From Laetmonice hystrix (lineage: Eukaryota), in contig OZ249453.1 in the NCBI GenBank assembly GCA_965235115.1, positions 7,192,001 through 7,256,000 of the forward strand: a stretch of DNA of 64,000 bases. The letters run 5' to 3'. The stretch's first letter is position 1, and each line of letters opens with the position of its first letter. The position numbers were made by a program, and so were the translations under genes. Below are positions 5,020 to 56,784 of this stretch, in pieces. The notes below the pieces were generated by a model that ran no database searches, was not told where the DNA came from, and saw only the letters and a program-made list of their open reading frames with translations.

Positions 5020-5296
5020 GAGGAAGGAGAAGGAAAAGGCAAATGGAAAACTAATACATGACCAAAGGCCAGAGAGAAACCGTGAAGAAGAAAATAAACA
5101 GACGAAGAAAAAGAGGAAGAAGATGATGATAAAGAAGAAGAAGAAGAAGAAGAAGAAGAAGAAGAAGATGATGATGAAGAAGAGGAAGATCAAGAAGATA
5201 AAGAGGAAGAGGAAGAAGAAGGAAAAGACAAATAGAAAACCAATACATGACCAAAAGCCAGAGAAACCCCGAGAAGAAAATAAGCAGACGAAGCAG
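5020..5296 (+). repeat. (GAA)n-rich low-complexity tract with a duplicated ~70-bp motif, running into a gap
   Basis: GAAGAAGAA run at about 5130-5170. AAAT(G/A)GAAAAC..ATACATGACCAAA occurs at about 5041 and about 5231. Confidence 0.85.
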
Positions 5297-5498
5297 NNNN
5301 NNNNNNNNNNNNNNNNNNNNNNNNNNNNNNNNNNNNNNNNNNNNNNNNNNNNNNNNNNNNNNNNNNNNNNNNNNNNNNNNNNNNNNNNNNNNNNNNNNNN
5401 NNNNNNNNNNNNNNNNNNNNNNNNNNNNNNNNNNNNNNNNNNNNNNNNNNNNNNNNNNNNNNNNNNNNNNNNNNNNNNNNNNNNNNNNNNNNNNNNNN
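5297..5498. other. Assembly gap (N)
   Basis: Run of N. Confidence 1.
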
Positions 5499-8400
5499 CA
5501 TGTATTATTTGTGATTTAGTTGCATACAGGAAACTGACCATGATGCATTATTAGGTATATCACCCCAGCTTGCGAATCACGATCGAGAGTGTTTGCGGGA
5601 TGTCTCACCCGTATAGTGTTGTCGACTGGCCGAGTCGTCGATAGAACAGAATTGTCCCGTAGAAATCGTACGGTACGCCCGTCGTCTCTTGTGTATCTTG
5701 ATTTTTTAAAAGATTCGTTTTCGTTTCCTCTCCGTCGTTTTATTTTTACCCTGACAGTCTTACTGAAGTCAATATGTCCACTTTCACTGCCGAGATAGAT
5801 ATTCACTTAACCAGGCTCCGGCTGGTCGTCAATTCCCGTCCATCTCCCTCTCGGTGACATTTATGGGTGCCGTTTTTTCGTCGTTTAATGCATCATCTGA
5901 GAGCCTTCTAACACGAAACCATTTCTTCCACCTCCCGTCGTATGTCATGAATGTATATGCTCCATGTCAGACTCCTGCTAGGTTCTTTGAGTTCAGCTGA
6001 GATGACATCAGTGAATGTTGGTAATTTTTACGCCGTGTCGACAGCTAAGGCAATCTTCATGGCGAAAACATGTTGAACCTATAAAAGGGACTTATCCCGA
6101 GTCAGTAGGAGGCAGGCACATCGGATAGGTTGATGATATCGTTTGGGTTCTCACAGCATCAGGCGCAAGAAGAATGCGTTATAGACACATTATGGCGCTT
6201 GCTCCACTATACGCCAGCAAAATGAGTTCTTCAATATCTACTCTCAGCCAGGCCAGCCTCTCATCCTAACCAATGAATGTACTTGTAATGCCTTCCATTA
6301 AAATGGGGATTTCACGCGAAACACGGAATGGAAAGTCGGCTAAAATACATTGATCCAAAGCGTTGATGTGCTGCGGTGCCACATTGGCATTCCCTTTTAC
6401 AGGATATTCCTCGCGGAAGGCGAGGCACGAGAAGAGATTCAATACGAGTGGAGAGGGAAGGGGAGATATTATTTTTACGGTTTCTAATGTTGATACTTTT
6501 TTTAGACGTGTAAATTCCTACGTCTCCATAATTCGCCAACCCTCATCCCGTTCGTCGCCTTTTACAGAGATACCCAACGGGGAGAAGCTGGGGTCTATTC
6601 ATACATTTTACACATATATAAGGAGGTTCACTATAAATAAGTTCAACTGTCAGCAGAAATTCATGCGACGTAAAACGTAACAATCCGGAATGGGACTAAC
6701 TTGAATGTTACTTATTCACAAAGCGAAAAACAGCAGAATCGGTATAGAAAATAAATCACTCCAAGTTTGTGCATTCAAAACGTCATGATTGAAGCCCCTG
6801 GTCCAGAGACGGTGGCCAAACGAACTGACCTTGTGAAGGTCATGGTGTGCTGCCCTAACAGTCACCCTCGGGTGGTGAGGTGGAGTTGGCTGGCATGAAA
6901 CGGGGATTAATAGTTATTCCGGTGACTGCCCCTCTCCACCTGATGAAGTATTCATCCTGTATCCAGGTCGCAACGGTCAGGCGTGGCATACATACTGCGC
7001 ATGCGCGTCACTAGGATTGCTACGCATGCGCATGCTCTATGATATCATCCTTCCGGTGCGGACAGGCGATTGTCCTGTGGCTCATTGTCATGGCAGATCA
7101 AAACCAATGTTCACTAACCGAAAATAAATGATGAATCGAATTCAGTGGTAAATCATCAAGCCATCTGCTTCACCTCCCCAGCGAGGAAACCCACCCACCG
7201 ATTCAAATAATGACAGCTCCATTGGCATTATAAAGGCGGCCCTCAGTCGCCTCCTAGTATCCTCCCTTGGTCACCACAACTATTATACTCCCCATGGTAA
7301 AATCCCATAAAATTTGTGGTAAGGTTTGGGTGTGTGGGGCAGGGGTTGATATAGGGCAAATATTTGGAGGAGGACAAGGATTAGGGGTTGGGATTAAGTC
7401 GGGGATGGAAATATGGAAATAGTGACAAATGTGTACGTCTCTCCGCCATATTTCATGGAGTTAGTGTCATGAACGATGTACCCTAACAGCGCCCTCACTC
7501 GATCAATGAGCTTGTCCGATTCGCCTGCTTGGTGTTAACCTAGTTTTTTAAACCGCCTGTCACTATATCGTTAAAAAATCTGCGGAAAAAGGGACATTAT
7601 GTATACACGAAGTTGGTCGTGTGAGCCAACCAAAGAAGAAGGATTAGCAAGCACTTTCTAAAAGATCCGTGGGAATGCACAATTGAGATGGAAATGATGA
7701 ATTGTACTCTGCGGTGACGTCCATTGGCCTGTACCAAACAACTGCATGCGTGTGTAAGTACCATGCAAGATTTCAAGTTGTGTGACCATCAATGTTATTA
7801 CGAGATCATGTTATTATTCCGGAGATTGAGGCAAACTCTAGCCATAACCTCGCATGTGTAATTGGTTCCAGATCTTCATCATTATTCTGGCACTGTCCGC
7901 TGCCTTGATCTGTCGCCATCCGGCTTAGTGGGCTTACATTACCATTCCTGTCCGCCCTGCCCTCCAAAACGTTACATTTACACAGAGAATACCTAATACA
8001 TCGCTTTGATAAAAGCTTCATGAAATGAGAAAACAGCAATGATATTACACCGCCAGCCACTCGCCTTTATAAGAAGCTGATGTGCATCAAAACAATGCTT
8101 TCTTTTGTTCCTCAAACGTCGTAGGTAAAGACTTCGTTGCGAGTTCAAACCTTGAAGTAGCTATTTGAAGTGAGGAACAGGACGCTGTTCCGGACCACGT
8201 GTTATGACTCGATAATTCGTAAATCAAATCAAATCGTACCGCTATACAGGGTGAGTAAAAAAAACTATACACTCAAAAATAGGGTAAGGAATCAGAGATT
8301 TGGCAAAATCAGGACAATGTAGTAATTAGTACAGAAGGAGTTATTCTTGTGCTTCAATTTTGTGGTTGATTCCCTAAGATGCGACTAAAAATAAAGAAAA

Positions 8401-11822: not shown

Positions 11823-12829
11823 TGAGAGCCGTAAAAGTGTCACTTATGTACCCTCTCGTATCGTTACCATTGCTTTCAGGGGGGGGGGGTGTACTGTATG
11901 GAAGAGCCGTAAAAGTGTCACTTATGTACCCTCTCGTATCGTTACCCTTGCTTTCAGGGGGGGTGTACTGTATGGAAGAGCCGTAAAAGTGTCACTTATG
12001 TACCCTAGACAATCGTATCGTTGCCATTGCTTTCAGGGGGAGGGTGTACTGTATGGAAGAGCCGTAAAAGTGTCACTTATGTACCCTAGACAATCGTATC
12101 GTTACCATTGCTTTCAGGGGGGGTGTACTGTATGGAAGAGCCGTAAAAGTGTCACTTATGTACCCTAGACATTCGTATCGTTGCCATTGCTTTCAGGGGT
12201 GTGTGTACTGTATGGAAGAGCCGTAAAAGTGTCACTCATGTACCCTAGACAATCGTATCGTTACCATTGCTTTCAGGGGGGATGTACTGTATGGAAGAGC
12301 CGTAAAAGTGTCGCTTATGTACCCCAGACAATCGTATCGTTACCATTGCTTTCATGGGGGGGGGGGGTGTACTGTATGGAAGAGCCATAAAAGTGTCACT
12401 TATGTACCCTATACAATCGTGTCGTTACCATTGCTTTCAGGGGGGTGTACTGTATGGAAGAGCCGTACAAGTGTCACTCATGTACCCTAGACAACCGTAT
12501 CGTTACCATTGCTTTCAGGGGGGGGGGGGTGTACTGTATGGAAGAGCCGTAAAAGTGTCACTTATGTACCCTCTCGTATCGTTACCATTGCTTTCAGGGG
12601 GGGTGTACTGTATGGAAGAGCCGTAAAAGTGTCACTTATGTACCCTAGACAATCGTATCGTTGCCATTGCTTTCAGGGGGAGGGTGTACTGTATGGAAGA
12701 GCCGTAAAAGTGTCACTTATGTACCCTAGACAATCGTATCGTTACCATTGCTTTCATGGGAGGGGGGGAGGGTACTGTATGGAAGAGCCGTAAAAGTGTC
12801 ACTTATGTACCCTAGACAATCGTGCTTTC
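11823..12829 (+). repeat. Minisatellite, ~75-84-bp unit, ~13 copies with a variable poly-G
   Basis: Unit GTGTACTGTATGGAAGAGCCGTAAAAGTGTCACTTATGTACCCTAGACAATCGTATCGTTACCATTGCTTTCA(G)n. Confidence 0.95.
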
Positions 12830-14446
12830 GGGCAGAAGGAGAAATAGATGCAGTCATACACCACACACCCACTTTCGGTAAGGGGCACCTACCAAAACCT
12901 ACAGATATCCCAGACATTCCAGTGATGAGCTACTCGTCGGCTATCAAAGAAATAAAAATCTGACGGACATAATAGTGTCCATCAAACTCAGGTAAATTAC
13001 GTTCATCGGAACATTTTCACAAGCGCATCCGGGTAAACCTGATGCCAGTACATTGGGGCGGATTAATTCTGTCCACCGAATATGAATCATACACTTAACC
13101 ATAGAAACAAAAAACAAGCAAAACAAACCGGGACCAGTTATAAATGATGCTATTATCTCCCCGAACAGTGAGATATCAAAGGACCTGTTCTTGGACACCA
13201 CTAGGGTCATATATATTTAGTATCTACGACGATACATCGATATAAATGTAGAGAAATATCGATACAAAACGATACACCCATGAGTTGTCATGGGCGTAGC
13301 TACCACAGGGCCCATGAACGTATCCCTACGCTTTTGTTGTTTTTTGGTTTTACATACTTCTTTCATATATCGAGTTTGGCTGTAGGAATGGACGCTGGCG
13401 AAGCATTAAAAAGAGTCACATTTATAAATCTCTGAAGCCAATATCTAAGAGTATCATGACCGCACAATGATACTGCGACAGCAGGAGAATGCACTCAGAA
13501 TGTAAAAAAATGCACAATTCTTTCATTTTTTTCTGGGTGGGGGAGCACGCCCTGGCTCGGAGGTTGGCAGCTCCTGTGCTTGCTGCTATTTCATGGGGAT
13601 CCATGCTTTCCTAAACGCTAGCCACGCCCTTGGTGGCTAAAACATAAATCCACAGGAGCCTGGTTAAAATTTCATACAGATAGTTCCCACTCCCATTTGT
13701 TCGTACGTCAGTAGGCAGTAAAACACAAAGTAGAACAGAACAGTGTCTAACAATAGTCTGGCCCTGCGACACCATAATTTGCATATCAAATAGCTCCCAG
13801 GATATGCGCACGTGACTGCAATGTAGAGACTGCTCTAAACTCGCAATTTTGCGATTTAAAAAATATGACTAATTAGAACAAATTTTACGGACGCAAAATG
13901 TGTATTAAAATTAGGCTTTATTCTTTACGTTAGGCATTCAGTACTTGAAGACTATTAATTTCGCTGGAAACTTTGTTTCTATCTGAGCTAACGCTGGATC
14001 ATTCGGAACACCGAGCCCTTTACGATGTAGAGAGACACACACTAGCGAAGCGACCGGAAGTTGGGCTGAGGTTTTCCGAATGACGCTGGACATGTGTACA
14101 CGCCCTCTCTGTGGTTCTCGACCTGGAGGCGGTTATACGGGGGGGGGGGGGTCGGATAAATGAATTATATCACCACTGTTGGCACGTAGGCTGTGAGGCA
14201 CCGGTCTCCACGTTCGGTTGTAGACTGGGAACCGACGCTGTTGTAGACCTGGCAGTAGGAGGAGTCACAAACTGAGACATAAAGCGAGAATAAACTTGGA
14301 GAGGTGAGGGTGTAACTCGAGGATAAGTGTGACACGACTGTTCTAAAGGGATGTAGCGATACAACCCGTACCCCGTCAGTGGGCTCAATCTGCGGTAAGG
14401 TTCCAAATCAGTTGGCTTTCGATGGGTTATCGTGTGTCCGTGAGAC

Positions 14447-14760: not shown

Positions 14761-16874
14761 ACGGGGAGAAAGTATTAGATGGTCCGGGGACCAGGAGTGT
14801 GGCGTAGGATGAAGTTTGGTGCCAGGAATATTTATAGATTTCCTAACATCAAATTTCATGGAGGTTTACCATGGGATTTACTTGTTTCCCATCATTGCAT
14901 GTGGCGCCCCCTAGGGAGAGAACGGAGTGTGCTTCTGAGCTGAATACACAGAACAATCTTTTCTCCATCAGGCGACGGTAAGCAAGAGGCACTCATAACC
15001 TCTGATACACGGCCAGGAAACCTATTGCTTTCCGTTTCATTCTGGGTTCGAGGCTTAAAAAGATTCCGAAGTGTTAAGTAGGGAGTCCTCAGGGGCCACT
15101 AATGTAGAAGAAAATCTGAACACGTAACCCGGTTTGACTACGAATACAAATAGATAGTATTCTGCTGGAATTCTCTATATCGTTGCTAGCAGGGGGAAAT
15201 GTAGTCAAGGGATAACGCTGTCTTAAAGTTTGTAGTTTTTATTCTATGTCTTCGTGTGGCTGTGCACTGGTTGGTTAGTGTGCAAGCCTTGAGAGGAAAG
15301 AATGAAAATCGCACACAGAATAGCAATAATCATCTGGCTTTAGTCAAATGAAAAGGAAGAAGTTCTTAAACTATCAAATCAATACGAATTCATCCACATC
15401 GCGACGGAATTTGGTCTGATAAAGACAGGAAGTACGAGGAAATTCAAAGGCCTTTAAATGTGAACATTGAGTTGGTTCTTGCGCTACTTCAACAACTCTA
15501 TTCACGGGAGGAACTATTTCAGGACGTAAGGAGATTTTCTGTGTAACAATATTATGCTGCAATTCAGTCATAGTAAAGCGGTCATTCCAGCGCCAACATA
15601 TTGTGCCCACACATCGGGCTATGCTATATTTAATTCGCTGATATTTTATAATGAAATGTTTTTGTCGCTTTCCTGGATAGACAGTGATTAGTATTGAAGA
15701 CATACCCGTCCCATCCCCTGACAAAATGGTTCAAAGGATTATCTGAAGAAGATTTAACAAGTTACAATTCGTGGAAACATGAAGGTTTCTCAGTGATTTG
15801 TTCAGCATGGTGGTTGGTTAATTAAATTCATATTGTCTGCACACCATCATCACAAAGACCGTGAACATGGACTTGACACATTATGTGAGGTATGTGATAT
15901 AACATTTTCTATACATTGAACATTCAGTGGTGTGCGTATTCAAGGGGTGGGAGAGCTGTTACATTTGATAAAATTCCATGAAAAGATTTTGTCCCTGTGA
16001 AGATCGCTCCCAGACTAAAAAAACTGCGCTTTTATCTTTTATATTTGAATATTTTTTCAGAACTTCTCCCTCAGATTACCCCTGGGTCTTTACCAAATCT
16101 GTCTTTGTTTATTGAAACGCACTGGAGTCTCTGCGATTTATCATGCAAGTACTGCAGCTCAGGTGAACGGCTTGCGTGAAGCCTCTCCTTAGATACTTCT
16201 GAAAAACAGAACTCTTCTCTCCGCACGGATAGAACATGATCTTTTAAAACGAAGGACACTGCCAAACTCACAAACCATGATCTGCCTGCATTAGCTGCAG
16301 ATATCATGGCCGTTTACGCCCATCGTATCTGACATTAGTGTCTAGTAAACAAAGCAAATAACGTATGATGTTATCTGGTCACAGAAACGCCAGCGGTCTG
16401 GAAACCGGATGTTGGTTCCATTTTGATCGGAACCTAGCGGAGCAAACCAGCGCCATCTTGTGCCACATATTGTCATCCTCGGCCTGTGCGCACGCGCGGA
16501 AGGACACGTCCGGATGTCCTGGGTGTCCTCGGTCCTGCTCCACTGTCTGGGATGTATCGTCATAAAGAGTTAGGCAACCAAACCTTACTGACCATTTCAT
16601 CATGGACACACACTTACTCAGTGTTTCCTATCGCGTAGTATTTGCAGTCGTCTTTTTTCGTTGTGAAACATTTTTTCGTTATGAAATCTCCGTTACACGC
16701 CCAAACCGTTAACAACGTCTTGTACTCTCCGTGGAACCAGAACTTTCTGTGTCGTACGTCAATATGTCTGAGCTGTTCTGACAACAGTCGGTGCAGCTGT
16801 TTAAACGCATACCACCTTCACCGGCAGCGCATGGGGATAGGAAGGCAAAACATGATACCATTGGAGAAACACTT

Positions 16875-17150
16875 TTTATGCAGTCAAACTCGGAGAACGG
16901 GAATGCTTTGCTGTAGGTTACATTTTATTCACATACATAGTAACCCGTTGATCACCCCATGCAATGGGGGACTCTACAAACATTATAATATGGTAAATGA
17001 TAAATCTATATAAGGTGTAACTGATATATGTAACAACATAACAATACTATAGTAATATAATACATAACCGATAATACATTATATGGAAATACATAGTCCA
17101 AAATACATAGATATAGGTATAGTAATGCCTTATTAGGTGGAGACAATGCC
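16875..17150 (-). repeat. Split direct repeat B2 (3' terminal, 276 bp)
   Basis: Identical by eye to 17614-17889 (offset 739). Confidence 0.95.
16924..16929 (-). terminator. Candidate polyadenylation signal AATAAA in repeat B
   Basis: TTTATT on the + strand, about 50 bp inside the element 3' end. It is also present in B1 at 17663-17668. Confidence 0.45.
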
Positions 17151-17312
17151 CACAACATCCAGGAACCCAAATACATCCCTATCCAACCAAACTGAGAAAA
17201 GAACTCGGGCAGCCATGCTGACCCCAAGCCAAACCCAGTAGGTCTACATAAAAACATAATTTAAACCAGGCAAAGGCGTTGAAACATGGAGGAGTCGGGG
17301 CGGAGGTGGGCC

Positions 17313-17616
17313 GTCTGATTTCCACGAAGCTTCCAAAGGTAGAGAACTCGACTCTTCTGCTCGGTTGTATTTATACCCTCCGGATCGTCTCCCAAGTCGC
17401 CTTCGTCATTTCCGACCCAGACCGCGCGAGAGGCGAGAACCAAGATGGTGGTTAACGGGAGTACAGCTATTGTTTACATTACCTCGACAATACATACTGA
17501 GCACACGACATGGGTCCTAGATACATATGTGCGAGTACCTATACTAATATACCTACGCAAACCCCTCGTTTCTCCTCCATAAATGATCCCGGCTCTTTGG
17601 CGCCGAGCTCGGATTT
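17313..17616 (-). repeat. Split direct repeat A2 (internal, 304 bp)
   Basis: Identical by eye to 22837-23140 (offset 5524). Shares TTT (17614-17616) with B1. Confidence 0.95.
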
Positions 17617-17889
17617 ATGCAGTCAAACTCGGAGAACGGGAATGCTTTGCTGTAGGTTACATTTTATTCACATACATAGTAACCCGTTGATCACCCCATG
17701 CAATGGGGGACTCTACAAACATTATAATATGGTAAATGATAAATCTATATAAGGTGTAACTGATATATGTAACAACATAACAATACTATAGTAATATAAT
17801 ACATAACCGATAATACATTATATGGAAATACATAGTCCAAAATACATAGATATAGGTATAGTAATGCCTTATTAGGTGGAGACAATGCC
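17614..17889 (-). repeat. Split direct repeat B1 (internal, 276 bp)
   Basis: Identical by eye to 16875-17150. Confidence 0.95.
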
Positions 17890-18649
17890 ACTAAGCGGAA
17901 TCGAAGATGAAGCTGGAGCCACCAAAGAAGGCAGGAGAAAAGACTCCTAACGCGACCCGCTGACACCGCCCCAGGAGCCAAATCTACGCATCACCGTCAG
18001 ACACAACTTGGAAATTAGGCACAGATCATCTCCTGGCCTAAACGAACGGATAGCGGAACCCATCATCATCCAGTCCGATTAGGGGCATCTGGTGTACCTG
18101 CAACAAGCATATCAAGGCTTTGAATCATAAGACATACGGAAGAAGACCTTAGATCCTTGGAGTCAACATCATAACGTCAGGTTAACAAGTTATAACACCC
18201 AGCTGCTTGACCAAACAGGAAGCACCCACCATTAAACTCCATTACACCATACTTACTTATCCTGGGAAATTGTGATAGACTGAGAAACTGGTGGAAAAAC
18301 GTGACGGTATCCCATTCTACCACCTGGGACCATACTATAAATATTTAATAATAAATAACCGAACCGGGCAACAATCCAAACTTCCTCGTCACTGAACCGG
18401 GCGACAAAGCTGCCTCGTCACTGCACCGGACAACATTCCAATTAAAGCTTACTTCATCCACCTCCTTCAACGCGTCGTCTATCTAGCCGCCCCCGAGCAC
18501 TTACCTACCACTTTGTACGGTACCAAACTAGTACCCACCAGACAGCTACAGAGCCCAACACTTAATGATACACGGATCGTAACGTAAGCATAAGGTAACG
18601 TAAAAAGGGAAGACTACTGGAATAACAAATACTGGAGGTGAAGGACGCG

Positions 18650-19735
18650 CAAACGTAGCAGGAACCATGAAAGTCGTAGTCAAAAACCGTGGAATCGGTT
18701 CACGCTTGGGAGTCCAACATACATCCAACATCGGATCTCTTGGGCCCGGGAGGTTTCCCAAAACTTAAAAAGATAACTGATCTCCGTATATACACATACA
18801 CATAATAACCACATAACCACATCACATACACATAATAACCACAGGATCACATGAACAAGTTAAATGCCTTGATATCCGAGACCAACCACAAACATGGGTT
18901 AAGCCTATACGCGGCAAGTATTCCACATACCTACAAGAAATACATTCCATAGAGATGGTAGCTAAAGGAACATCTAAACCAAAACAACCTCTGAACCATA
19001 CCGAACCTTGAATAATATAATTCGACACTCAGCCCTTCGAACAACATCACAGGTTCAAAACACGGGGAATTGACTTACCCACATCAGTAAACCTCCAAAG
19101 TCAACCGAAGACACATACTCAGCCAAACGTATCAGGAACCATGAAAGTCGTAGTCAAAAACCGTGGAAACGCTTCACGCTTGGGAGTACATCCACAACGG
19201 ACCTCTTGGGCCCGGGAGGTTTCCCAAAACTTAAAAAGATAACTGATCTCCGTATATACACACACATAATAACCACATAACCACATCACATACACATAAT
19301 AACCACAGAATCATATGAACAAGTTAAAGGCCTTGAAATCCGAGACCAACCACAAACATGGGTTAAGCCTATACACATAATAACCACATGAACCAGTTAA
19401 AGGCCTTGATATCCGAGACCAACCACAAACATGGGTTAAGCCTATACACATAATAACCACATGAACAAGTTAAAGGCCTTGATATCCGAGACCAACCACA
19501 AACATGGGTTAAGCCTCTACGCGGCAAGTATTCCACATACCTACAAGAAACACATTCCATAGAGATGGTAGCTAAAGGAACCTCTAAACTAAAACAACCT
19601 CTGAACCATACCGAACCTTGAATAATATAAATCAACACTCAGCCTTCGAACAACATCACAGGTTCAAAACACGGGGAATTGACCTTACCCACATCAGTAA
19701 ACCTCCAAAGTCTACCAAAGACACATACTCAGCCT
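18650..19735. repeat. Tandem duplication of a ~480-bp block inside the element; the second copy has extra ~70-bp subrepeats
   Basis: CAGGAACCATGAAAGTCGTAGTCAAAAACCGTGGAA occurs at about 18659 and about 19133. GGCCTTGATATCCGAGACCAACCACAAACATGGGTTAAGCC-like sequence occurs once in copy 1 and three times in copy 2. Confidence 0.9.
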
Positions 19736-20560
19736 TCCATCAGCTCTTATCAGTACAAATGAATGTGTAAATATAGAATACGTCCCACGACCCATGCACC
19801 AAAGCCATATGCTCAGCCTGTCGTCCACCTAAAATGGAAAATAACAAAAGACCGAAGAAACATCTGGCAGAGGAATAATAGTTACTGCCCTATGACAAAT
19901 ACAATCAACTCAATATCAAAAAATTGCATAAATTCCGCTTATACATTATGACAAATCAAATTAATCATCCAAAAATACGATAATACTTATTACCTTTATA
20001 GTTAACATTGAAATTATATAGTTAGACGAAATTACGATAAATATATAATATAATTATAGCCCTCAACACAAAGTAAAAACTAAATAGGCAACATTTAACT
20101 AAGGTGACAACCCTGACTAACATTGTTAATAATTTTATCGAAGATACCTAATATTACCAAATTAACAAAATAGTACATTGAAAATTTGACAAGATAATTT
20201 ACAAAGTTAATGAACAAGATATTTAAGTGCAGACGGTCCCACCATATAGCCCGAAGGCGAGGCAGATCCAAAAAGCGTAAACACATAGTACACTTCTAAA
20301 TACAGTAGAAGTGACCTGACTTACTAACAACCTACCGACCTAAAATGACTTCTTAAACAACTTTAAAACAAGAAAATAAAGATTCAGCCCTAATCCTCGA
20401 AAAAGGCAGAGCGGAGGGGACATCCCCTCGCATCCATATACATAGGTACCCATCGATCACCCATCATGGGGACTAGAAGTACAATGCACCAAAGGATGTG
20501 GCAGCCTGCGGAAACCAGGCACATCTGCCGTAAAACAACTTGTAATATAACGGGGATGAC

Positions 20561-21277
20561 GGAACCGAAGGGACCACACCGTCGACCCCAAGGTAATCCT
20601 ATCAAGGGAGGACAGAACCCCACGGAACACGACACCACCCCCCAACCAAGTTAACACAACCACAAGGGAAGGCGGAACCGAAGGGACCACACACCGTCAA
20701 CCCCACGGAACACGGCCCCATCCCCCATCCAAGTTAACACAACCACAAGGGAAGGCGGAACCGAAGGGACCACACACCGTCAACCCCACGGAACACGGCC
20801 CCATCCCCCAACCAAGTTAACACAACCACAAGGGAAGGCGGAACCGAAGGGACCACACACCGTCAACCCCACGGAACACGGCCCCATCCCCCAACCAAGT
20901 TAACACAACCACAAGGGAAAGCGGAACCGAAGGGACCATACACCGTCAACCCCACGGAACACGGCCCCATCCCCCAACCAAGTTAACACAACCACAAGGG
21001 AAAGCGGAACCGAAGGGACCACACACCGTCAACCCCACGGAACACGGCCCCATCCCCCAACCAAGTTAACACAACCACAAGGGAAGGCGGAACCGAAGGG
21101 ACCACACACCGTCAACCCCACGGAACACGGCCCCATCCCCCAACCAAGTTAACACAACCACAAGGGAAAGCGGAACCGAAGGGACCACACACCGTCAACC
21201 CCACGGAACACGGCCCCAACCCCCAACCAAGTTAACACAACCACAAGGGAAAGCGGAACCGAAGGGACCACACACCG
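20561..21277. repeat. 83-bp tandem array inside the element (~8.5 copies)
   Basis: GGAACCGAAGGG starts at 20674, 20757, 20840, 20923, 21006, 21089, 21172 and 21255. A diverged first unit starts at 20561. Confidence 0.97.
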
Positions 21278-22836
21278 TATGTTACACCACATTAAGCCCA
21301 CATCAGCAGAGCCCCGTTATTCGTAAACACAACACCCCCCCCCCCCCACCTCCAACACACACACACACCTCACTAACACGAGGAAGGGTGGGGTGGGGTG
21401 GGTCTACAAACTATTGGCAAAATACTTAAACGACAAAAACTTTCAGATGAGGTGGTAGCTAAATCTACACGCCTATTAATCAGGGGCAATTAGATTAAAT
21501 GATGTAAATCCTGAAACAGAGGGACAGGTAGTCTGCCTAGTAAGGTTCAGGGGACAACTAAACTCAAAAATACAAAATCAAATACTTACAAATGGATAGA
21601 CTCAAAACAAAGCAACCACAAGGAGTGAATACCAAACTACTACATAGAAAATAACATTGACGAAATCCCCCTACCATGCGACTGCATCAATGAACCACAC
21701 TGAACAGTGAGGGGCACCTGTCCAGATCCAGATATAATATCAGGGATAAGCCACTCGTTGGCTACAAGAGAAAGAAAATTATCAGCGACACTAAATTAGA
21801 GTCCAACAAGTCAGGTAAAATTACATTCATCAAACCATCTCCAAAGCTTATCAGGTTAAAGCTGGTGCCAATACATCCAGATTAATCTGTCCACCGTAAA
21901 TAAATACTTCTACCCGAATAACAGCACCACATACCGCTCGAATACCAGCGCAGCATACCCACATCCAAAAAGCACCCCAAGCAAACGGCAAGAAGCATTG
22001 CCGCCAAGCGATAAACACTGTATTTAACATAATCTAGGGAGGGCACTTCGAAAACCATACCAACTGTTGCAATTAGGAGCAGCAGTAAACGCCTATATAA
22101 GACGGGACTAGATAAATTAAAGAACACCCGGCGTGTCAAGTTACAGCAGTTCACTGGTCAAGTCCCAAACCACCGAAGGACACAACATAACTTCTACCAA
22201 CCTTCAACCCCACATAGTGAGGACTAGCGAAAAACACCAACTCCACGACAATGTAGGCCTACCTCACACTTTTACGAGCCTACCCCCACCATGATACACC
22301 ACGTGGCAGGACAAACCGTTGTAGGCCTATAAGCTCAACCTTGGTACCGAACGCTATTACCCTACTCAACACGGAGTAAACCACGGTAAAACAAAACTGA
22401 AATTATCGTACCCCCACTACCATTCTGGGACAAATACGTACACAAAATTACACAACATAGCACCGCCGACGTCGTCAGTCGCCCTCAATGTGTGGTGAAC
22501 TAAAATAACTACAAACTCGTAACACAAATTGTCTACCAGGAGCTTCAAGTAGGCTAGCCGAGCCCGAACCACAAAGGTCAGGTCGACCACGTGGAAGCGA
22601 CTGTGCGTGCTGCAACACTGCATGTGACTATTTCAGACACACATAAATACTGGGTACCGGTCTATAATACAGCCTCGAAAGACGAATAACTGGAACTGTT
22701 TTAGACATAACACCTGCATATAGGTGTCAAACACAAGGCAAATATAAGAAACAGTCGACAAACCACGTTCCACCGTATACTTGAAACGAAGTCCCAACCA
22801 TAGAACGAACTCACCCGATGTGTGGGGAACGAATCA

Positions 22837-23140
22837 GTCTGATTTCCACGAAGCTTCCAAAGGTAGAGAACTCGACTCTTCTGCTCGGTTGTATTTATAC
22901 CCTCCGGATCGTCTCCCAAGTCGCCTTCGTCATTTCCGACCCAGACCGCGCGAGAGGCGAGAACCAAGATGGTGGTTAACGGGAGTACAGCTATTGTTTA
23001 CATTACCTCGACAATACATACTGAGCACACGACATGGGTCCTAGATACATATGTGCGAGTACCTATACTAATATACCTACGCAAACCCCTCGTTTCTCCT
23101 CCATAAATGATCCCGGCTCTTTGGCGCCGAGCTCGGATTT
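22837..23140 (-). repeat. Split direct repeat A1 (5' terminal, 304 bp)
   Basis: Identical by eye to 17313-17616. Confidence 0.95.
22894..22899 (-). promoter_or_regulatory. Candidate TATA box (TATAAA) in repeat A
   Basis: GGTATAAATAC on the minus strand about 60 bp before the inner end of A1. The same motif is at 17370-17375. Confidence 0.4.
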
Positions 23141-23661: not shown

Positions 23662-23991
23662 GGATAGCAATCAGACCTAAGACAGTGTCAGACCACGTTC
23701 GGACCATTCTACCTTTGGATAGCAATCAGACCTCAGGCAGTGTCAGACCACGTTCGGACCATTCTACCTTTGGATAGGAATCAGACCTAAGGTAGTGTCA
23801 GACCACGTTCGGACCATTCTACCTTTGGATAGCAATCAGACCTCAGGCAGTGTCAGACCACGTTCGGACCATTCTACCTTTGGATAGGAATCAGACCTAA
23901 GGCAGTGTCAGACCACGTTCGGACCATTCTACCTTTGGATAGCAATCAGACCTAAGGCAGTGTCAGACCACGTTCGGACCATTCTACCTTT
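23662..23991 (+). repeat. 55-bp tandem array, 6 copies
   Basis: GGATAG(C/G)AATCAGACCT(A/C)AGGCAGTGTCAGACCACGTTCGGACCATTCTACCTTT starts at 23662, 23717, 23772, 23827, 23882 and 23937. Confidence 0.97.
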
Positions 23992-46990: not shown

Positions 46991-48997
46991 CAGATAATGA
47001 GGCTCGCAAAATATTCACAGATTAATTTAATCAAACTATTCACACGTTACTGCCAATTCCACAATTCTCGTAACCACATTCCTCAATAGACTTTCACATT
47101 GGTTCATCAATATTCACACACCTGGTAAATTAAGCATTTTCATCAAGCAATCAATAGTGCGGGCCCTAGGTTGATGAACAGTTCGGTTGTTTTTTTTGTT
47201 GTTGTTGTTGTTTTTGTTTTTTTTGAAGATGGAGAAATTCTGTCGCTGAAGTCATCCTTACGGCACTCCGTTACATTGACAGTTCGACCGTGTCGCCGCT
47301 CAGGACACACGATTAGTGTCGGTAAAAATGATCTATTATCACACATTCTATCTTTGTAATGCTTCCACTAATTGTACGGTTTGAATGCTAATTAACATAC
47401 TTTTGACTGATCATAAACCTCCAAATGGAATTTAAACTTCCCAGTGTGGATTTGAAGTTTTTAGTCAGGGATTTGCATTCTCCTCCTCCTTCTCCCCCTT
47501 CTCGAGCTCCTCCTCCTTCTCTTCCTTCTCGAGCTCCTCCTCCTCTTCTTCCTCCTCCTACTCCCATCCGCGGGATTCCCCAGTTCAAGCACTCTCGAGA
47601 GTATAGACCTATGGAGCTTTACACCATAAAGCGAAATCTTGGCTAACATTACACGCTATTTCGATCGTTTGGTTGATGTCTGTTTGAACAAACCCTCTCA
47701 ATTGAGTTCCGGTACGGTTCAGCGATCCCAAACATCGGCGAGAACTCTGTTTGAACACACGGCTTGTCGGATCAGGCCCCCAGGGGGCGCTGGTCGCGTC
47801 ACCTCTCGTGAGTGGACAGAAAGATAAGTCACGTGACCGACCGCCCTGCCACCTAGTGTAGCCTACTACTCCGCCTGACTGTGGAGCTTGTGTCTGAATA
47901 CTATGGACAGAATAGCGGGTAGCGATAGCAGGGAACATGGGGCGGAACAGTGGTGCGGTCTGTTCTGTGCGAACACAGCTCGGAACCCAGTGTAATTGAT
48001 GTAATCCCCCGGTTAAAAACTCCCGGCTGCGGAGGTTCAACAGACGAACGGTAGATGGCGCGCAAGTGACTGTCCTTATATGAGCGCCACATCCTTGTAA
48101 TTACACTCCACGCCCGCTCTAAACGTCATCCCAATGGCATAAAAGAAGTTGTAAACATGTATCAACTCCTACATGTTGGAGAATATTGCTCTTTTACATA
48201 AGAGGTTCCCAGCAAATTTTGTGAACTTTCTCTATCATATGGCAGGCATAGTGAAGGCTTGCTCTATTACTATGAGACCGTGCAAGATTGGATGAGACGC
48301 TTCATAAATTGGGCTAATCAGGAAAGTAAATGAATAAATGTGAAATGACATAAGACGTGGTTGAACCATCTTCGTCTCTGTAAATATCAACCCCCCTTTT
48401 ACTTCCGGTCGTGGTCTGCCGTAATTCAGCCTTCGCTTTGATTTAACAAATGCTCTAACTAAAATCAAAGAAGCTGAAACAGTAATTATCCATTCAAATA
48501 AATCAAAGAATCTTCTACTAACTTCGCTAAAGTATCATAATTGAAAAAGGCATTTTCAATTCGTTTAAAAGGATATGGAATGATACATTACTTTTAATTT
48601 GAAAAACATATCGCCATTGAAAATGTGTAGAAAAAAAGACAGCATTAATTCCTTTCTCAAGGACTTGCGATCAAGCCAGTATGAGTAGGCTATTTTATGA
48701 AAGGTGTGCAAGAGAACGTAATCTGAACTAGCTGAATGTTTACAAGATGAATTAATCCTGACTAAAGTTCTTAAATAAAATGGGACATGGAAATGTACTG
48801 GAGCATACTGCATCGCTCCAAGCATACACGACATAATGAACTTTATTTGATGAGACCTAAGATACTTCAAAATAATGCCCCCGTCTATGTTTCTCATAGC
48901 AGTACAATCTGAAGAACACAAATGGGGAACTGATCCCGAGAGCTGGCGTTAGTGAGATGGCCAAGCTTTAGTATGGATGCTGTAGGCCTACATGCTT

Positions 48998-49520
48998 GGT
49001 CCATTGACAGTTGCGGCGAATGTTGCTTCAGTCTGGCTGCTGTTTGGCCCATTGACAGTTGCGGCGAATGTTGCTTCAGTCTGGCTGCTGTTTGGTCCAT
49101 TGACAGTTGCGGCGAATGTTGCTTCAGTCTGGCTGTGTTTGGTCCATCGACAGTTGCGGCGAATGTTGCTTCAGTCTGGCTGCTGTTTGGTCCATCGACA
49201 GTTGCGGCGAATGTTGCTTCAGTCTGGCTGCTGTTTGGTCCATTGACAGTTGCGGCGAATGTTGCTTCAGTCTGGCTGCTGTTTGGTCCATTGACAGTTG
49301 CGGCGAATGTTGCTTCAGTCTGGCTGTTGTTTGGTCCATTGACAGTTGCGGCGAATGTTGCTTCAGTCTGGCTGTGTTTGGTCCATTGACAGTTGCGGCG
49401 AATGTTGCTTCAGTCTGGCTGCTGTTTGGTCCATTGACAGTTGCGGCGAATGTTGCTTCAGTCTGGCTGCTGTTTGGTCCATTGACAGTTGCGGCGAATG
49501 TTGCTTCAGTATGGCTGCTG
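48998..49520 (+). repeat. Minisatellite, 48-bp unit (some 47), ~11 copies
   Basis: Unit GGTCCATTGACAGTTGCGGCGAATGTTGCTTCAGTCTGGCTGCTGTTT. Confidence 0.97.
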
Positions 49521-51872
49521 TTAGAGTGTCAAACGCGTTAATTAACGAAACACGCGTAAACCCGTTGCATAACGGGGGCGTTTTCTTACGAAATGTTGCT
49601 AATTGAAGCACTAAGTGCCCTTTTTAGCGCGGATAAAAGGTGCGGGTTAATTGTTGAGTAACTGATTTGTCCTTAATTAACGACGTAGTATCGTTATTAG
49701 CACATTAGTTACATTGAACACATCAACAAATATTGCGGCTAGGACAGTGCCATACGGGCGTAATGTACAATCCTGATTCTGTAATGCCGGGAGAAGATTT
49801 GGAAGGACGTCATGGAGGTAGTGGTAATGAAAGGCATCCGAAAGTGTGAATCCTTTTGACGGATACACCCCACGCAAATTCATTCAAGATATCGGTTGTT
49901 GTACAGAGGGCACTGGATGTAGGTGGTGGTTTCTCCCATAGAGAACGTGTATGTGTAGGCTATAATAATTATAATGTCATTTCATGCTCATTGTTCGCAA
50001 AACCATCTAGGTGTACAACGAATTTCGTTTACAATAATGCTATATGTTTCGCCCATCTTATAGTATACCTAATCTGTCGTTCCAAATTTTCCAGCGATAT
50101 GCTACACCATGATCATATTTTATTTTTTATGTTATCTATTATACGCTCACGGCGAAGCCCGAGGCGTATAACCTGGGGACATGAGGGGTGGCCGTGGTCT
50201 ATCTCACTTAGTCATTACGTTGGCAGTTGGAGAAATGAATGGCAAACACCCCTAAATGACGCTGGGTTCGTTGGTCCAGTTGAATATATTTGGATCTTGG
50301 ACTCATCCGAGTGGCCCCGACCGGCCATAGAAAGTCAAGTACCGTGACCGGTGTGTCCACCACCTTTTCATGGTGGTGCCAATGATCAACCTTGACCGTT
50401 TTCTGCTTTGAGTTGGAATAACTCGCCCCCCCCCCCCCCACTATGAAGCATACTCGCAGTGTTTAAAAGAATTCTATATATCTTGGTGATGCAATGGATT
50501 ATTTCTTGTAGTTGTGATGGAGATCTCTCCCTAAGCAACGCTTTGTTGAAGTGGAAGTGGAAGATAAAGTGGAACGTTAAGTTCCCTTTCCATACTATTT
50601 TACGACTGCCGCCGTTCGACTGCTGGCGCCACCTGTCGACCACCTTCTCATTTCTCACTATGGAACGCCATTACTAAAACTAAAAAGAAAGCCACACTTA
50701 ACGTACAATCTTAAGTTACATCATATAAAATATATATTAAGTCTTATTGCTGCCATGATTTGCTCGTGCATTCCTACCGATAACTTCCCTTGCCTCCATG
50801 GCCATCGGCACCACGCCCATTAATTCCAACCACTATCTGGGCCTACTTCAGTCAAAATGACATCCTCGCGTAAACAAGCGGGATAGAGCATTGATTCCAT
50901 CCACAGCAGAGGTATAAATCTGTCACTAGTCTAAATATGATGCTCTGTTCTATCGAAACAAGCCAATTCTATCTCTGATGAATACCTCCTTACAGTGTTA
51001 GCGAACATAATCAACGACAATAATTTTTATTTATAACATTTAAGAACGTTTTGTAATTTTTCCTTATTTCTATAAAGTTGTAATATTGTTCCTGAAGTAG
51101 AACTTTACATGCTTCTCAACCACCACATTTGTATTGAATGGTAATTGGGGAAGTCACTGTTTCGTATCGTAACAGAAAGCAATAATGTCTTTCCTTGAGG
51201 AGATCCTCTTACACTTCTGTAGTAATTAGACTATTGTCTTGAATTGCTACATTTGCTAATCCTGCTGGCAGTGCAGGTTGGTTGCAAGCTTCATTTAGTC
51301 ATACGAAATAATTTTACCAACTTGCCGAAAGGTTCCCCTATGAATACCACCTATAATATCACCTCATTTAAATATAAAATTGTCGATCATGATTTACGTA
51401 ATACAATAAAGGGGAATCAAATATTAAAAGTCGAAGTACAAACTGCCAAAAAAGGGTGGAATGCATAAAAAAAGAAAATACTGGTTCTTCAAATTTCAAG
51501 CAATGACTACCATCTATATGTATAAAAATGTAGTAAATACTTTTACTATGAAGTGTTTACTCCAGTAAAAGCACATACTTCTTTCGATATGAATAATAGA
51601 GAGCGACTGTTTGGTTATTCGGAGCAAGTGCCAAAAATTTCCAAGGTAGCTCCATATAGTTACCTTGACTTCTGAAGTGGTTGCACATGGTAATATTTGC
51701 TGGTGAAAGACCGCTGAAATGGCAGCTTCGTAAAAAAAAGTTCGTTGCTTGCATTATCACCGGTTTATCGTTATATCCAAATTGATAATATTGCTCAACG
51801 GCGAATTCCTATAATTGTAGTGGCTGTTTGGGGACGGCAAGAAACGAGAATCAATCAGTTCAGTTATGGTGC

Positions 51873-55200: not shown

Positions 55201-55692
55201 TGTGTTACCAATGCACATTAACTCCGTTCTTCAATGTGTGTCGAATCGCATCCTCTATCAGTGTGTGTCGAATCGCATGAAGCATCCTCTAGAAACGTTA
55301 CTTTTACAGCGAATTATCTCGGCAATTGAAAGGGTTTTTTTCTGAAAGATACAAAAAGGGTTTATGCACCTACTAATGCTGTATTTACTTTGGTTAGCAG
55401 TGCACCCAAGTTACTGGTCTTACTCGGCTTTGATGTACATGGAATTATTCATTTGTGTTCTCTTGTTACAATAAAGGACAGCGAACAACTTGTGGGTCAT
55501 CCAGGTTGATTCCTTATGGTAACGCCTCGTCAAAATATGGTGGTCTCTAACCCCTTCCCCCTCAAATTTGGTGGTCCGAACAATATATTCCTAGCCCCTG
55601 ACCCCATTGGTCCTCAGATTTCCTATTATAAAGTATTTTTTATTTTTTACCCCTGCCCGTGACTTCCAATGTCGTGGGAATGTTACTGTGGC

Positions 55693-56044
55693 GAGGAACT
55701 AACGACAAGAATGAAATGACACAAAATTAGCAACATGAGGAACTAACGACAAGAATGAAATGACACAAAATTAGCAACATGAGGAACTAACGACAAGAAT
55801 GAAATGACACAAAATTAGCAACATGAGGAACTAACGACAAGAATGAAATGACACAAAATTAGCAACATGAGGAACTAACGACAAGAATGAAATGACACAA
55901 AATTAGCAACATGAGGAACTAACGACAAGAATGAAATGACACAAAATTAGCAACATGAGGAACTAACGACAAGAATGAAATGACACAAAATTAGCAACAT
56001 GAGGAACTAACGACAAGAATGAAATGACACAAAATTAGCAACAT
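55693..56044 (+). repeat. Perfect 44-bp tandem array, 8 copies
   Basis: GAGGAACTAACGACAAGAATGAAATGACACAAAATTAGCAACAT x8, with no variants seen. Confidence 0.97.
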
Positions 56045-56784
56045 CTGCCCAGTGCCATTGCTATAGGAAACTTCCGCCGGAAGTTGGGAGATTGGCAGGT
56101 AAAGCAATGACTGCACGACAAGCGCATGGAAAGGGTGTTAATTGTTATAATATCAGATGTCAGGAAAACGTTGCTCCCCCCCCCCCTAATCTTTTAAAGG
56201 AGCGTTCTGGATCAACAATCATGTTGGAGAAGAGTGACATCTAAGCATGACAAATATTGTTAGAAGTGACATTTATACATTTATAGGCCTACTTTGCAGA
56301 TGTTTCAGGCTAATACGTGTATATTGTTTCTGACAAAAAGCGCGTATATCAGTAAATATTGTACTTGCCTTGAAGTAATGTTTCATGTTAAAACTCAACC
56401 GAATACCTAATACAGTCAGAGGATTCCACAGCTGTCTATACTTTACTTTAATTATCGCATTTTCCTCGACAGTAGGGGAATGGGATTTTGAGACTGTAGC
56501 TGTTAGTGTACATTCTTCTATGCCTGTGAAATTGTGTATATACCATAGAACTGTACTGGGACAGTTCTATGTATATACTAAACATGTCACTATAGATCTA
56601 CGTCATATATTTCCTACCTCACTTTGGGACGCCATTCCCGCGGATTTTTTAACCACTCTCCCAGGTGTTAGAAAAACGCAGCTAGGGGCCTAAATAGCCT
56701 GAACTTGGTCTTACATGTCTTACATTGCTGAGGAGGACATCCAACTGGAGATGGCACTAGTACTAGGCTTACTGCATGCGGTAT

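What the first reader, a model, noticed from the sequence alone, without database searches (positions are those of the whole stretch)
16875..23140. Young, ORF-less split-direct-repeat retroelement (TOC1/PAT/Ngaro architecture) in an animal genome
Seen: the minus-strand order is A1 (304 bp) - 4.9 kb unique - B1 (276 bp) A2 (304 bp) - 162-bp spacer - B2 (276 bp). Both repeat pairs look identical, there are no TG..CA LTR ends, and no internal ORF exceeds about 90 aa. Established: the A...BA...B layout defines PAT/Ngaro-type tyrosine-recombinase retrotransposons. As I recall, Chlamydomonas TOC1 is a non-coding element with this same layout, a short spacer and an internal tandem array. Inference: this is a 6.3-kb non-autonomous parasite mobilised in trans by an RT/YR-encoding partner, and repeat identity implies recent transposition. 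Large non-coding elements of this class are poorly documented in animals.
Basis: partly seen in the sequence, partly recalled or inferred. Interest (0 to 1): 0.88.

Follow-up and report, generated by a model that had tools for sequence, protein, structure and literature searches.

The report
Protein-less Ngaro-type split-repeat retroelement family
This is a real, recently inserted copy of a jumping gene that encodes no protein and must borrow enzymes from related tyrosine-recombinase (Ngaro-type) retrotransposons in the same animal genome. The kind is already known (TOC1, SIRE), and the scan met it twice before in this genome.

Summary
On the minus strand the order is A1 (304 bp), 4,947 bp internal, B1 (276 bp), A2, a 162-bp spacer, then B2. 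Both repeat pairs are 100% identical, and no ORF exceeds 90 aa.

It is neither a local duplication nor a misassembly:
- The B1|A2 junction occurs 57 times across the 627-Mb genome.
- About 43 further loci are 742-bp "solo" A-spacer-B forms.
- All copies examined end at the same nucleotides.
- Copies are 97.4-100% identical to this one.

Sister non-coding families share a conserved junction core with a low-copy coding lineage (gag-like, RT/RNase H, tyrosine recombinase). That lineage's closest public relative is a canonical Ngaro element with the same A1...B1A2..B2 layout.

New details:
- A palindrome straddling the B|A junction shows compensatory changes.
- The crossover triplet is AAA/TTT.
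- Targets prefer AA 6-7 nt from the triplet.
- One spacer variant is carried almost only by solos.

No fully intact helper copy was shown, and no RNA data exist. The scan found the same kind twice before on other DNA of this genome. Verdict: new member of a known kind (TOC1-like non-autonomous DIRS-order element), of moderate interest.

The parts
22837..23140 (-). A1, the 5' terminal repeat (304 nt including the terminal AAA at 23140-23138 on the sense strand). It carries a TATAAATA box at 22899-22892, about 240 nt into A.
   Evidence: 100% identical to A2. TATA position. The TATA block is conserved in fam2.
17890..22836 (-). Non-coding internal region (4,947 bp). It holds the 83-bp x 8 array (20616-21278), the 73-bp array (19315-19520) and ~610-bp internal duplications (18650-19734).
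   Evidence: No ORF over 90 aa. No tblastn match to Ngaro gag, RT, RNase H, YR or GDSL proteins. No Rfam family or tRNA. Arrays.
17890..17995 (-). Last ~100 nt of the internal region before B1. It is homologous to the 3' end of the recombinase ORF and the 3' UTR of the coding relative L086.
   Evidence: L086 sense 1172-1580 matches element sense 5147-5593 at 68% identity, E 1e-40. The block is conserved in fam2.
17614..17889 (-). B1, the internal copy of the 3' repeat (276 nt), with AATAAA at 17668-17663.
   Evidence: 100% identical to B2. AATAAA position.
17578..17619 (-). Junction palindrome, sense CATAAAT-N27-ATTTATG plus an inner stem. It straddles the B1|A2 junction, and the crossover triplet AAA (17616-17614) lies in its left arm.
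   Evidence: Folds in three families with z -2.3 to -4.5. 17 pairs, 97% of cells paired against 27-43% when slid, and 4 pairs changed on both sides. The same geometry with different letters occurs in the public Ngaro locus L092.
17313..17616 (-). A2, the internal copy of the 5' repeat (304 nt, sharing 3 nt with B1).
17151..17312 (-). 162-bp spacer between A2 and B2. A 25-nt marker within it is present at 78 loci.
16875..17150 (-). B2, the 3' terminal repeat (276 nt), with the polyadenylation signal AATAAA at 16929-16924 and the terminal AAA at 16877-16875.
16867..16874 (.). Target-site motif in the flank (+ strand AAACACTT). A at -7 and -6 from the TTT core is typical of the family's insertion sites.
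   Evidence: A at -7 in 22 of 25 and at -6 in 21 of 25 independent left flanks.

Best explanation
The stretch is one young copy of a protein-less, non-autonomous retrotransposon family of the Ngaro-like branch of the DIRS order (tyrosine-recombinase retrotransposons). The sense strand is the window's minus strand.

Inferred cycle:
1. RNA polymerase II starts about 30 nt after the TATAAATA box near the 3' end of A1. Polyadenylation follows the AATAAA about 50 nt before the end of B2.
2. The RNA therefore lacks most of A1 and the tip of B2.
3. A reverse transcriptase supplied in trans copies the RNA. The missing ends are restored from the internal B1-A2 copy, which is what the split repeats are for.
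4. The product is a circle whose B2|A1 joint equals the internal B1|A2 junction.
5. A recombinase supplied in trans exchanges the junction's AAA/TTT triplet with a genomic AAA/TTT. The preferred target has AA 6-7 nt away. The insertion has no duplication other than the triplet.

The most likely enzyme source is the low-copy coding lineage that shares the junction core and repeat geometry (best copy about C5:27,733,081-27,737,362). Other Ngaro elements of this genome may contribute.

Shown here: the architecture, copy number, identical termini, triplet sharing, target preference, homology to coding elements, and conservation of the TATA, poly(A) and palindrome blocks.
Inferred: the RNA, the circle and the trans-mobilisation.
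For: Architecture and absence of coding capacity.

Copy number: 57 junction-bearing copies and 78 spacer-marker loci on most contigs.

Termini: identical ends at 25 left and 17 right sites, with TTT at both ends but only once at the internal junction.

Age: copies are 97.4-100% identical to this one, mostly over 99%.

Sister families: fam2, fam3, fam4 and the C18 variant share the core TCG-N-ATTTATG-N-AG-N-CAAA together with TATA, poly(A) and repeat-edge blocks. Overall identity in A/B is only ~70-80%.

Coding relatives:
- L086 has RNase H (weak RVT_3 match) and a recombinase (weak Phage_int_SAM_4 match; HSFRIGAAS and LGRWQSDAFRKYIR motifs). The ORF ends at the B1 edge, and 454 nt align to the element at 68%.
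- C5 copy: RT and RNase H lie in one 607-aa open frame, with a 325-aa YR frame. A junction-type motif lies ~280 bp after the YR and again 745 bp further on. In this element the B-B spacing is 739 bp.
- The C3 and C4 copies show the same order.

Public relative: the closest public YR (56% identity) sits in L092, a canonical Ngaro element ordered A1, GDSL, a 419-aa ORF, RT, YR, B1, A2, B2, with a 3-nt AAA overlap between B and A.

Model: reverse transcription of Ngaro/PAT elements requires A1=A2 and B1=B2 at insertion (PMC6681497).
Against: - No RNA run holds the element, so transcription, strand and RNA ends are untested.
- No copy of the closest coding lineage was shown fully intact. The C5 gag-like frame is split (332 + 96 aa). 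C3 has ~1.4 kb extra between gag and RT and a 511-aa RT frame. C4 has a 449-aa RT frame. The L086 YR is frameshifted.
- The sense strand is T/G-rich (36% T, 19.5% A), unlike the A-rich sense strands I recall for most retroelements (the comparison is from memory).
- No empty site was read directly.
Confidence: 0.85

Rival explanations
1. The family moves as DNA only, as a non-autonomous Crypton-like element. A tyrosine recombinase excises and reinserts a circle without any reverse transcription.
For: The genome carries many recombinase-only elements, for example the 2.5-kb family with a 401-aa ORF. Insertion at a short shared triplet without duplication fits any tyrosine recombinase. No RNA evidence exists.
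Against: The recombinase-only family shares nothing with A or B. The split-repeat layout, and the conserved TATA box in A and AATAAA in B, are what an RNA intermediate requires. The nearest coding relatives carry RT/RNase H in the same element. Fifty-seven near-identical copies need a replicative process.
Confidence: 0.06
2. It is a non-autonomous LTR-type element (LARD/TRIM-like) or a composite of two LTR-like units, A-internal-B and A-spacer-B, moved by an integrase.
For: The 742-bp A-spacer-B unit also occurs alone, like a solo LTR, at about 43 loci. The A repeat carries a promoter-like box and B a poly(A) signal.
Against: There are no TG..CA ends and no 4-6-bp target duplication. The only shared letters are the TTT that is also the internal junction. 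No tRNA-type match was found. The same layout in coding relatives holds a tyrosine recombinase, and no integrase was seen there.
Confidence: 0.04
3. It is a dead relic. The copies arose by segmental duplication or a past burst, and nothing mobilises them now.
For: No fully intact helper was demonstrated, and there are no RNA data.
Against: A1=A2 and B1=B2 are 100% identical here, and several copies are over 99.8% identical to this one. The flanks differ at every copy. Contigs of the other haplotype run past the insertion point without entering the element, which suggests the insertion is still heterozygous.
Confidence: 0.05

Closest known systems
Ngaro-like elements (DIRS order; Ngaro1 of zebrafish and relatives). 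Represented here by the public locus L092.
   Same: Split direct repeats A1...B1A2..B2. The recombinase ORF ends at the B1 edge in the coding relatives. B and A share a 3-nt AAA overlap. A palindrome straddles the junction. RNase H is followed directly by YR with no room for a methyltransferase domain in L086. L092 has a GDSL ORF.
   Different: This family encodes nothing. Its 4.9-kb interior is unrelated to Ngaro proteins and is full of tandem arrays.
TOC1 of Chlamydomonas reinhardtii
   Same: The library describes it as an 'active nonautonomous DIRS retrotransposon' (10.1101/2022.06.16.496473). Like this family it is a several-kb, protein-less, multi-copy element of the same order.
   Different: It is from a green alga and belongs to another branch of the order. 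The cited paper names TOC3, a methyltransferase-bearing DIRS element, among Chlamydomonas DIRS retrotransposons. I made no sequence comparison. Its repeat layout is recalled from memory only.
SIRE / VIPER of Trypanosoma cruzi
   Same: SIRE corresponds to the A2-B2 region of VIPER (PMC6681497). That is the same thing as the 742-bp A-spacer-B solos here. The open question is also the same: mobile mini-element or remnant.
   Different: It comes from a different branch (VIPER-like) and a different host. SIRE has an autonomous parent with the same repeats, whereas here the full-length parent is itself non-coding.
LARD/TRIM non-autonomous LTR retrotransposons
   Same: Large non-coding interior, terminal repeats carrying promoter and poly(A) signals, solo forms, mobilisation in trans.
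   Different: Those have whole direct LTRs, TG..CA ends, a target duplication and integrase-based insertion. None of these is present here.

Membership tests
Ngaro-like / PAT-like split-repeat YR retrotransposons (DIRS order) | Split direct repeats in the order A1 - internal - B1 A2 - (short) - B2 | tested here: met
   The same order is found in the coding relative L092.
Ngaro-like / PAT-like split-repeat YR retrotransposons (DIRS order) | A1=A2 and B1=B2 (near-)identical at insertion, as the reverse-transcription model requires (PMC6681497) | tested here: met
   Both pairs are 100% identical.
Ngaro-like / PAT-like split-repeat YR retrotransposons (DIRS order) | Insertion without a target-site duplication | tested here: inconclusive
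   Only the TTT that is also the internal junction is shared by both ends, with no further duplication in 25 left and 17 right flanks. No empty site was read. The other-haplotype contigs are only suggestive.
Ngaro-like / PAT-like split-repeat YR retrotransposons (DIRS order) | Encodes RT/RNase H and a tyrosine recombinase | tested here: not met
   No ORF over 90 aa and no protein similarity. None of the 57 junction copies lies near a YR or RNase H hit. The element can therefore be only a non-autonomous derivative, not an autonomous member.
Ngaro-like / PAT-like split-repeat YR retrotransposons (DIRS order) | Sequence homology of the cis parts to a coding element of the family | tested here: met
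   L086 aligns over 454 nt at 68%, covering the YR 3' end, B1 and the start of A2. Junction-type motifs lie 280-320 bp after the YR frames of the C3, C4 and C5 copies; the full 24-nt core was seen exactly only at C3, and a 16-nt part of it at C4 and C5.
Ngaro-like rather than DIRS1-like or PAT-like | No methyltransferase domain; order gag - RT/RNase H - YR; optional GDSL ORF | tested here: inconclusive
   In L086 the YR ORF overlaps the end of the RNase H ORF, leaving no room for a methyltransferase. L092 has a GDSL ORF, RVT_1 and YR. No phylogeny was made, and the definition is partly from memory.
Retrotransposon (RNA intermediate) | Sense transcript from A1 to B2 | not testable with these tools
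   No RNA run holds the sequence.
TOC1-type non-autonomous DIRS element | Protein-less, multi-copy, recently active, with an autonomous relative in the same genome | tested here: met
   This shows that it works like TOC1, not that the two are related by sequence.

The most novel reading that the evidence does not exclude
Two linked readings remain open.

1. The 742-bp A-spacer-B unit may hold everything needed in cis for tyrosine-recombinase retrotransposition and may move as its own lineage, like SIRE. Evidence: one spacer variant occurs in 14 solos but only 1 full-length copy.

2. The junction palindrome may be the site where the element's ends are brought together and recombined, acting as a miniature counterpart of the DIRS1 internal complementary region. 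Evidence: it has an AAA crossover in one arm, it is kept through compensatory changes, and it recurs with different letters in a distant Ngaro element.

If both hold, the family would define the recombination site and the minimal mobile unit of Ngaro-type elements.
Probability: 0.3. Interest if true: 0.6.

Novelty: new member of a known kind. Interest (0 to 1): 0.45.

Why it matters
Tyrosine-recombinase retrotransposons are the least understood order of retroelements. Their circle intermediate, recombination site and cis requirements have largely been inferred from sequence rather than shown by experiment.

A young, abundant, protein-less family is a natural deletion experiment, because what it keeps is what the enzymes need. 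Here that is the two repeats, a TATA block, a poly(A) block, ~100 nt before B1 and a junction palindrome.

Several sister families share the junction with a low-copy coding lineage, and earlier notes of this scan report RT-less and recombinase-less Ngaro elements in the same genome. Together these suggest a community of partial elements that complement one another.

In the paper library searched, the only 'nonautonomous DIRS' element named is TOC1 of a green alga. A documented animal case with defined ends and target motif would therefore be useful to annotators, although it is not a new principle.

Tried and rejected
From then on, the genome search gave coordinates only. I did not try to read letters by other routes.

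2. The top PF00589 hits (401-aa ORF family, L061-L078) are a 2.5-kb recombinase-only element with no similarity to A or B. I rejected them as helper.

3. The search for homologous proteins with the N-terminal half of the L086 recombinase found nothing. That is uninformative because of its length window.

4. Rfam and tRNA scans of the element were blank.

5. tblastn of Ngaro gag, RT, RNase H, YR and GDSL proteins against the element gave only chance-level matches.

6. Both RNA-run searches found only DNA runs of one sample.

7. Read laying could not span both flanks within 6,000 letters, so the empty allele is only suggested. The first attempt met a busy machine.

8. The intact Ngaro lineages at C20:9.37 Mb and C29:14.36 Mb do not carry the exact junction core. 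They cannot be excluded as enzyme donors.

9. A looser 14-nt pattern was as frequent as its reversed control. I used it only at coordinates predicted in advance.
Full report
OBSERVATION

On the + strand the parts are:
- B2, 16875-17150
- a 162-bp spacer, 17151-17312
- A2, 17313-17616
- B1, 17614-17889
- a 4,947-bp interior, 17890-22836
- A1, 22837-23140

Both repeat pairs are 100% identical. A2 and B1 overlap by the triplet TTT (17614-17616), and the same triplet stands at both outer ends.

Inside, the longest ORF with a start codon is 90 aa, and the longest stop-to-stop frame is 119 codons. The interior holds an 83-bp x 8 array, a 73-bp array and ~610-bp duplications.

No Rfam family and no tRNA is present.

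IT IS A DISPERSED, YOUNG FAMILY

The genome has 627 Mb in 35 contigs. The window is C30:7,192,001-7,256,000.
- A and B each give 40 scored matches at 99-100% identity on many contigs, out of 240 and 433 candidates. Paired A copies lie 5.05-5.62 kb apart.
- The 24-nt B1|A2 junction occurs 56 times exactly and once with one mismatch. The reversed control occurs 0 times.
- In the fetched loci, 25 distinct left ends and 17 distinct right ends show the same termini next to unrelated flanks: flank|TTTATGCAG... and ...CTCGGATTT|flank. One right end reads TTC, so the outer triplet is at least partly target-derived.
- Nothing beyond the triplet is duplicated.
- Copies are 97.4-100% identical to the window copy over 1.8-2.5 kb, mostly over 99%.

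Contigs from the sequenced sample add a hint. In two runs the flank contig carries ten differences from the assembly and runs on for 580 or 485 letters past position 16865 without matching the element. In the third run the contig identical to the assembly stops at 16865. This suggests an empty allele on the other haplotype. I could not read the letters that run on, so it is not proven.

ORIENTATION AND SIGNALS

The minus strand is the sense strand. In the coding relatives (below), the recombinase ORF lies on that strand and ends at the edge of B1.

On that strand:
- A carries TATAAATA at positions 241-248 of 304 (window 22899-22892 in A1).
- B carries AATAAA at positions 222-227 of 276 (window 16929-16924 in B2).
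- AATAAA occurs nowhere else in the element on that strand. About 0.6 occurrences would be expected by chance, so this carries little weight.

A transcript would therefore lack about 270 nt of A1 and 25-35 nt of B2. Those are exactly the parts the internal B1-A2 copy can restore. This is the published logic for Ngaro/PAT elements, as summarised in PMC6681497.

SISTER FAMILIES AND CODING RELATIVES

Pattern searches around the junction found further families with the core TCG-N-ATTTATG-N-AG-N-CAAA:
- fam2, 23 copies, including tandem dimers with a 5.2-kb period
- fam3, 3 copies
- fam4, 11 copies
- a C18 variant

Their A and B repeats are only ~70-80% identical to this family. The following blocks are conserved:
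- the TATA block
- the poly(A) block
- the 5' edge of B (sense TTGTCTCCACCTAATAAGGCA)
- a GC-rich block at the 3' end of A
- ~100 nt before B1
- the junction

Their interiors, as far as fetched, are also non-coding.

One locus with the fam4-type junction, L086 (C3:2,508,413-2,511,436), is coding:
- On the sense strand it has the C-terminal part of an RNase H (weak RVT_3 match).
- This is followed by a tyrosine recombinase in two frames: a weak Phage_int_SAM_4 match, then HSFRIGAAS and LGRWQSDAFRKYIR.
- The stop codon lies at the B1 edge.
- 454 nt of it align to this element at 68% identity (E 1e-40). The alignment covers the last ~70 nt of the recombinase ORF, all of B1 and the first ~70 nt of A2.

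So the stretch just upstream of B1 in the non-coding family descends from the end of a recombinase gene.

L086 itself is a decayed single copy. It has a frameshift, no B2, and an A2 cut short.

Its relatives at 70-72% protein identity form a small lineage, placed by coordinates only:
- **C5 copy.** A gag-like frame of 332 aa plus a 96-aa frame (27,733,081-27,733,822). RT and RNase H in one 607-aa open frame (27,733,902-27,735,458). A 325-aa recombinase frame (to 27,736,327). A junction-type motif at 27,736,602 and again at 27,737,347. That gives a B-to-B spacing of 745 bp, against 739 bp here.
- **C3 copy.** A 336-aa gag-like frame, a 511-aa RT frame with ~1.4 kb extra in between, and a 325-aa recombinase frame. 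The exact junction core lies ~300 bp after the recombinase.
- **C4 copy.** Frames of 337, 449 and 329 aa, and the motif 302 bp after the recombinase.

A recombinase at C21:20,871,167 also has the core 480 bp downstream, but no RT or RNase H hit lies near it. Other apparently intact Ngaro lineages (C20:9.37 Mb, C29:14.36 Mb) do not have the exact core.

None of the 57 junction copies of this family lies near any recombinase or RNase H hit.

WHICH BRANCH OF THE ORDER

The L086 recombinase has 6,856 relatives in the public representative library. The best full-length one (56% identity) sits on an ENA metagenome contig, L092, within a canonical element:
- A1 (362 bp)
- a GDSL-lipase ORF
- a 419-aa ORF
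- two RVT_1 ORFs
- the recombinase
- B1 (737 bp)
- A2
- a 36-bp spacer
- B2

B1 and A2 again overlap by AAA, and AAA stands at both ends. The GDSL ORF, and the absence of room for a methyltransferase between RNase H and the recombinase, point to the Ngaro-like branch. This rests partly on my memory of the family definitions. I made no tree.

JUNCTION PALINDROME

On the sense strand the junction reads ...GACTG CAT-AAA-T CC GA G CTCGGC ... GCCGGG A TC ATTTATG.... This is a 17-pair interrupted palindrome (window 17578-17619). Its left arm contains the crossover triplet.
- It folds better than shuffles in three families, z -2.3, -4.2 and -4.5.
- Across eight distinct sequences from six junction variants, 97% of cells pair, against 27-43% when the partner is slid.
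- Four pairs have changes on both sides: C-G to T-A, G-C to A-T twice, and T-A to A-T. No pair changes on one side only.
- L092 has the same geometry with different letters, CTCTGTGTGTAAA ... TTTACACTCAGAG.

Related sequences inflate such counts. An inverted repeat bound by a protein dimer would co-vary in the same way as a hairpin. I therefore claim only that the palindrome is under selection.

One reading is that the right arm acts as a splint. It would hold the 3' end of B2 and the 5' end of A1 together, like the internal complementary region of DIRS1 (described in PMC6681497). That reading is inference.

TARGET

In 25 independent left flanks (+ strand), A stands at -7 in 22 and at -6 in 21, and T at -2 in 16. 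On the sense strand the target is about AAA-WA-NN-W-TT, with insertion at the AAA. The single L092 insertion fits this motif at all but one position.

SOLO UNITS

Five of the fetched loci are B-spacer-A only, 742 bp with the usual ends.

Genome-wide, a 25-nt spacer marker is found at 78 loci. Of these, 35 lie beside a junction and 43 do not.

One spacer variant (CCCCATCC) is carried by 14 solos and 1 full copy. The commonest variant is carried by 23 solos and 30 full copies (Fisher p = 8e-4). Two readings fit:
- the solos move as their own lineage, like SIRE of VIPER, which is the A2-B2 region (PMC6681497); or
- this is an older subfamily that has had more time to recombine.

About 8 loci have the interior marker without a junction. 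These could be A-internal-B single forms or truncated copies.

WHAT IS KNOWN

The paper library calls TOC1 an 'active nonautonomous DIRS retrotransposon' (10.1101/2022.06.16.496473). It describes SIRE as a non-autonomous derivative of VIPER (PMC6681497). No paper in it uses 'non-autonomous Ngaro' or 'non-autonomous DIRS' for an animal. Curated repeat libraries, which I could not search, may well hold such entries.

The scan itself reported two other non-coding split-repeat elements in this genome (s1-342755, s1-323315), both without a helper. It also reported RT-less and recombinase-less Ngaro elements (s1-342770, s1-310947, s1-330510). These are unchecked notes.

The present work adds a candidate helper lineage, the shared junction, the palindrome, the target motif and the solo census.

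VERDICT

The element is a new member of a known kind. It is of moderate interest, mainly as a natural guide to the cis requirements of Ngaro-type elements.

Noticed in passing
L081/L082 (G000:C1:23,653,207 and 23,658,424); also C3:4,964,440 and 4,969,642: The sister non-coding family fam2 occurs as head-to-tail dimers. Two B|A junctions lie 5.2 kb apart on one strand, and the second is preceded by interior sequence, not by B2-spacer. This is as expected from multimeric circles or unequal crossing-over.
   Followed up: partly
L061-L078 (e.g. G000:C30:3,045,714; C1:25,716,272): A ~2.5-kb element family, 97-99.9% identical between copies, with a 401-aa tyrosine-recombinase ORF and a 92-96-bp inverted repeat. 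No RT was found in the 3.5 kb fetched. It looks like a young Crypton-type DNA transposon.
   Followed up: partly
G000:C5:36,673,264-36,711,727: Seven recombinase-domain hits (129-aa frames), mostly 6,238 bp apart with two gaps of 6,672 bp, on one strand. This looks like a tandem array of a recombinase-bearing unit.
   Followed up: no
L088 2223-2633 (G000:C3:4,004,823-4,007,846): A fam4 non-coding element lies directly next to a fragment of another Ngaro-type RT/RNase H in the opposite orientation. LINE-like RT text lies on its other flank. This is nesting of elements in a repeat-rich region of C3.
   Followed up: no
window 59182-59709 (-): A 175-aa open frame matches Pfam Fringe-like (E 1e-7). 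It is probably an exon of an animal glycosyltransferase gene, consistent with an animal genome.
   Followed up: no
window 23662-23991, 48945-49613, 55649-56132, 57618-58240, 11877-12835: Several other tandem arrays (periods 55, 48, 44, 37/70 and 79-81/159 bp) lie in the same window, outside the element. The 55-bp array starts only ~520 bp from the element's A1 end.
   Followed up: no
G000:C1:25,529,592/25,530,492; C2:38,258,408/38,259,305; C3:20,284,238/20,285,128; C5:2,602,153/2,603,049; C5:31,170,721/31,171,620: Pairs of the motif ATTTATGTAGTCAAAA lie ~897 bp apart on one strand. They may mark a further split-repeat family with a longer B-to-B spacing. No recombinase hit is nearby.
   Followed up: no
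window 16875-23140, sense (minus) strand: The sense strand is T- and G-rich (36% T, 27% G, 19.5% A). From memory, this is the opposite of the A-rich sense strands usual for retroelements. It is unexplained.
   Followed up: no
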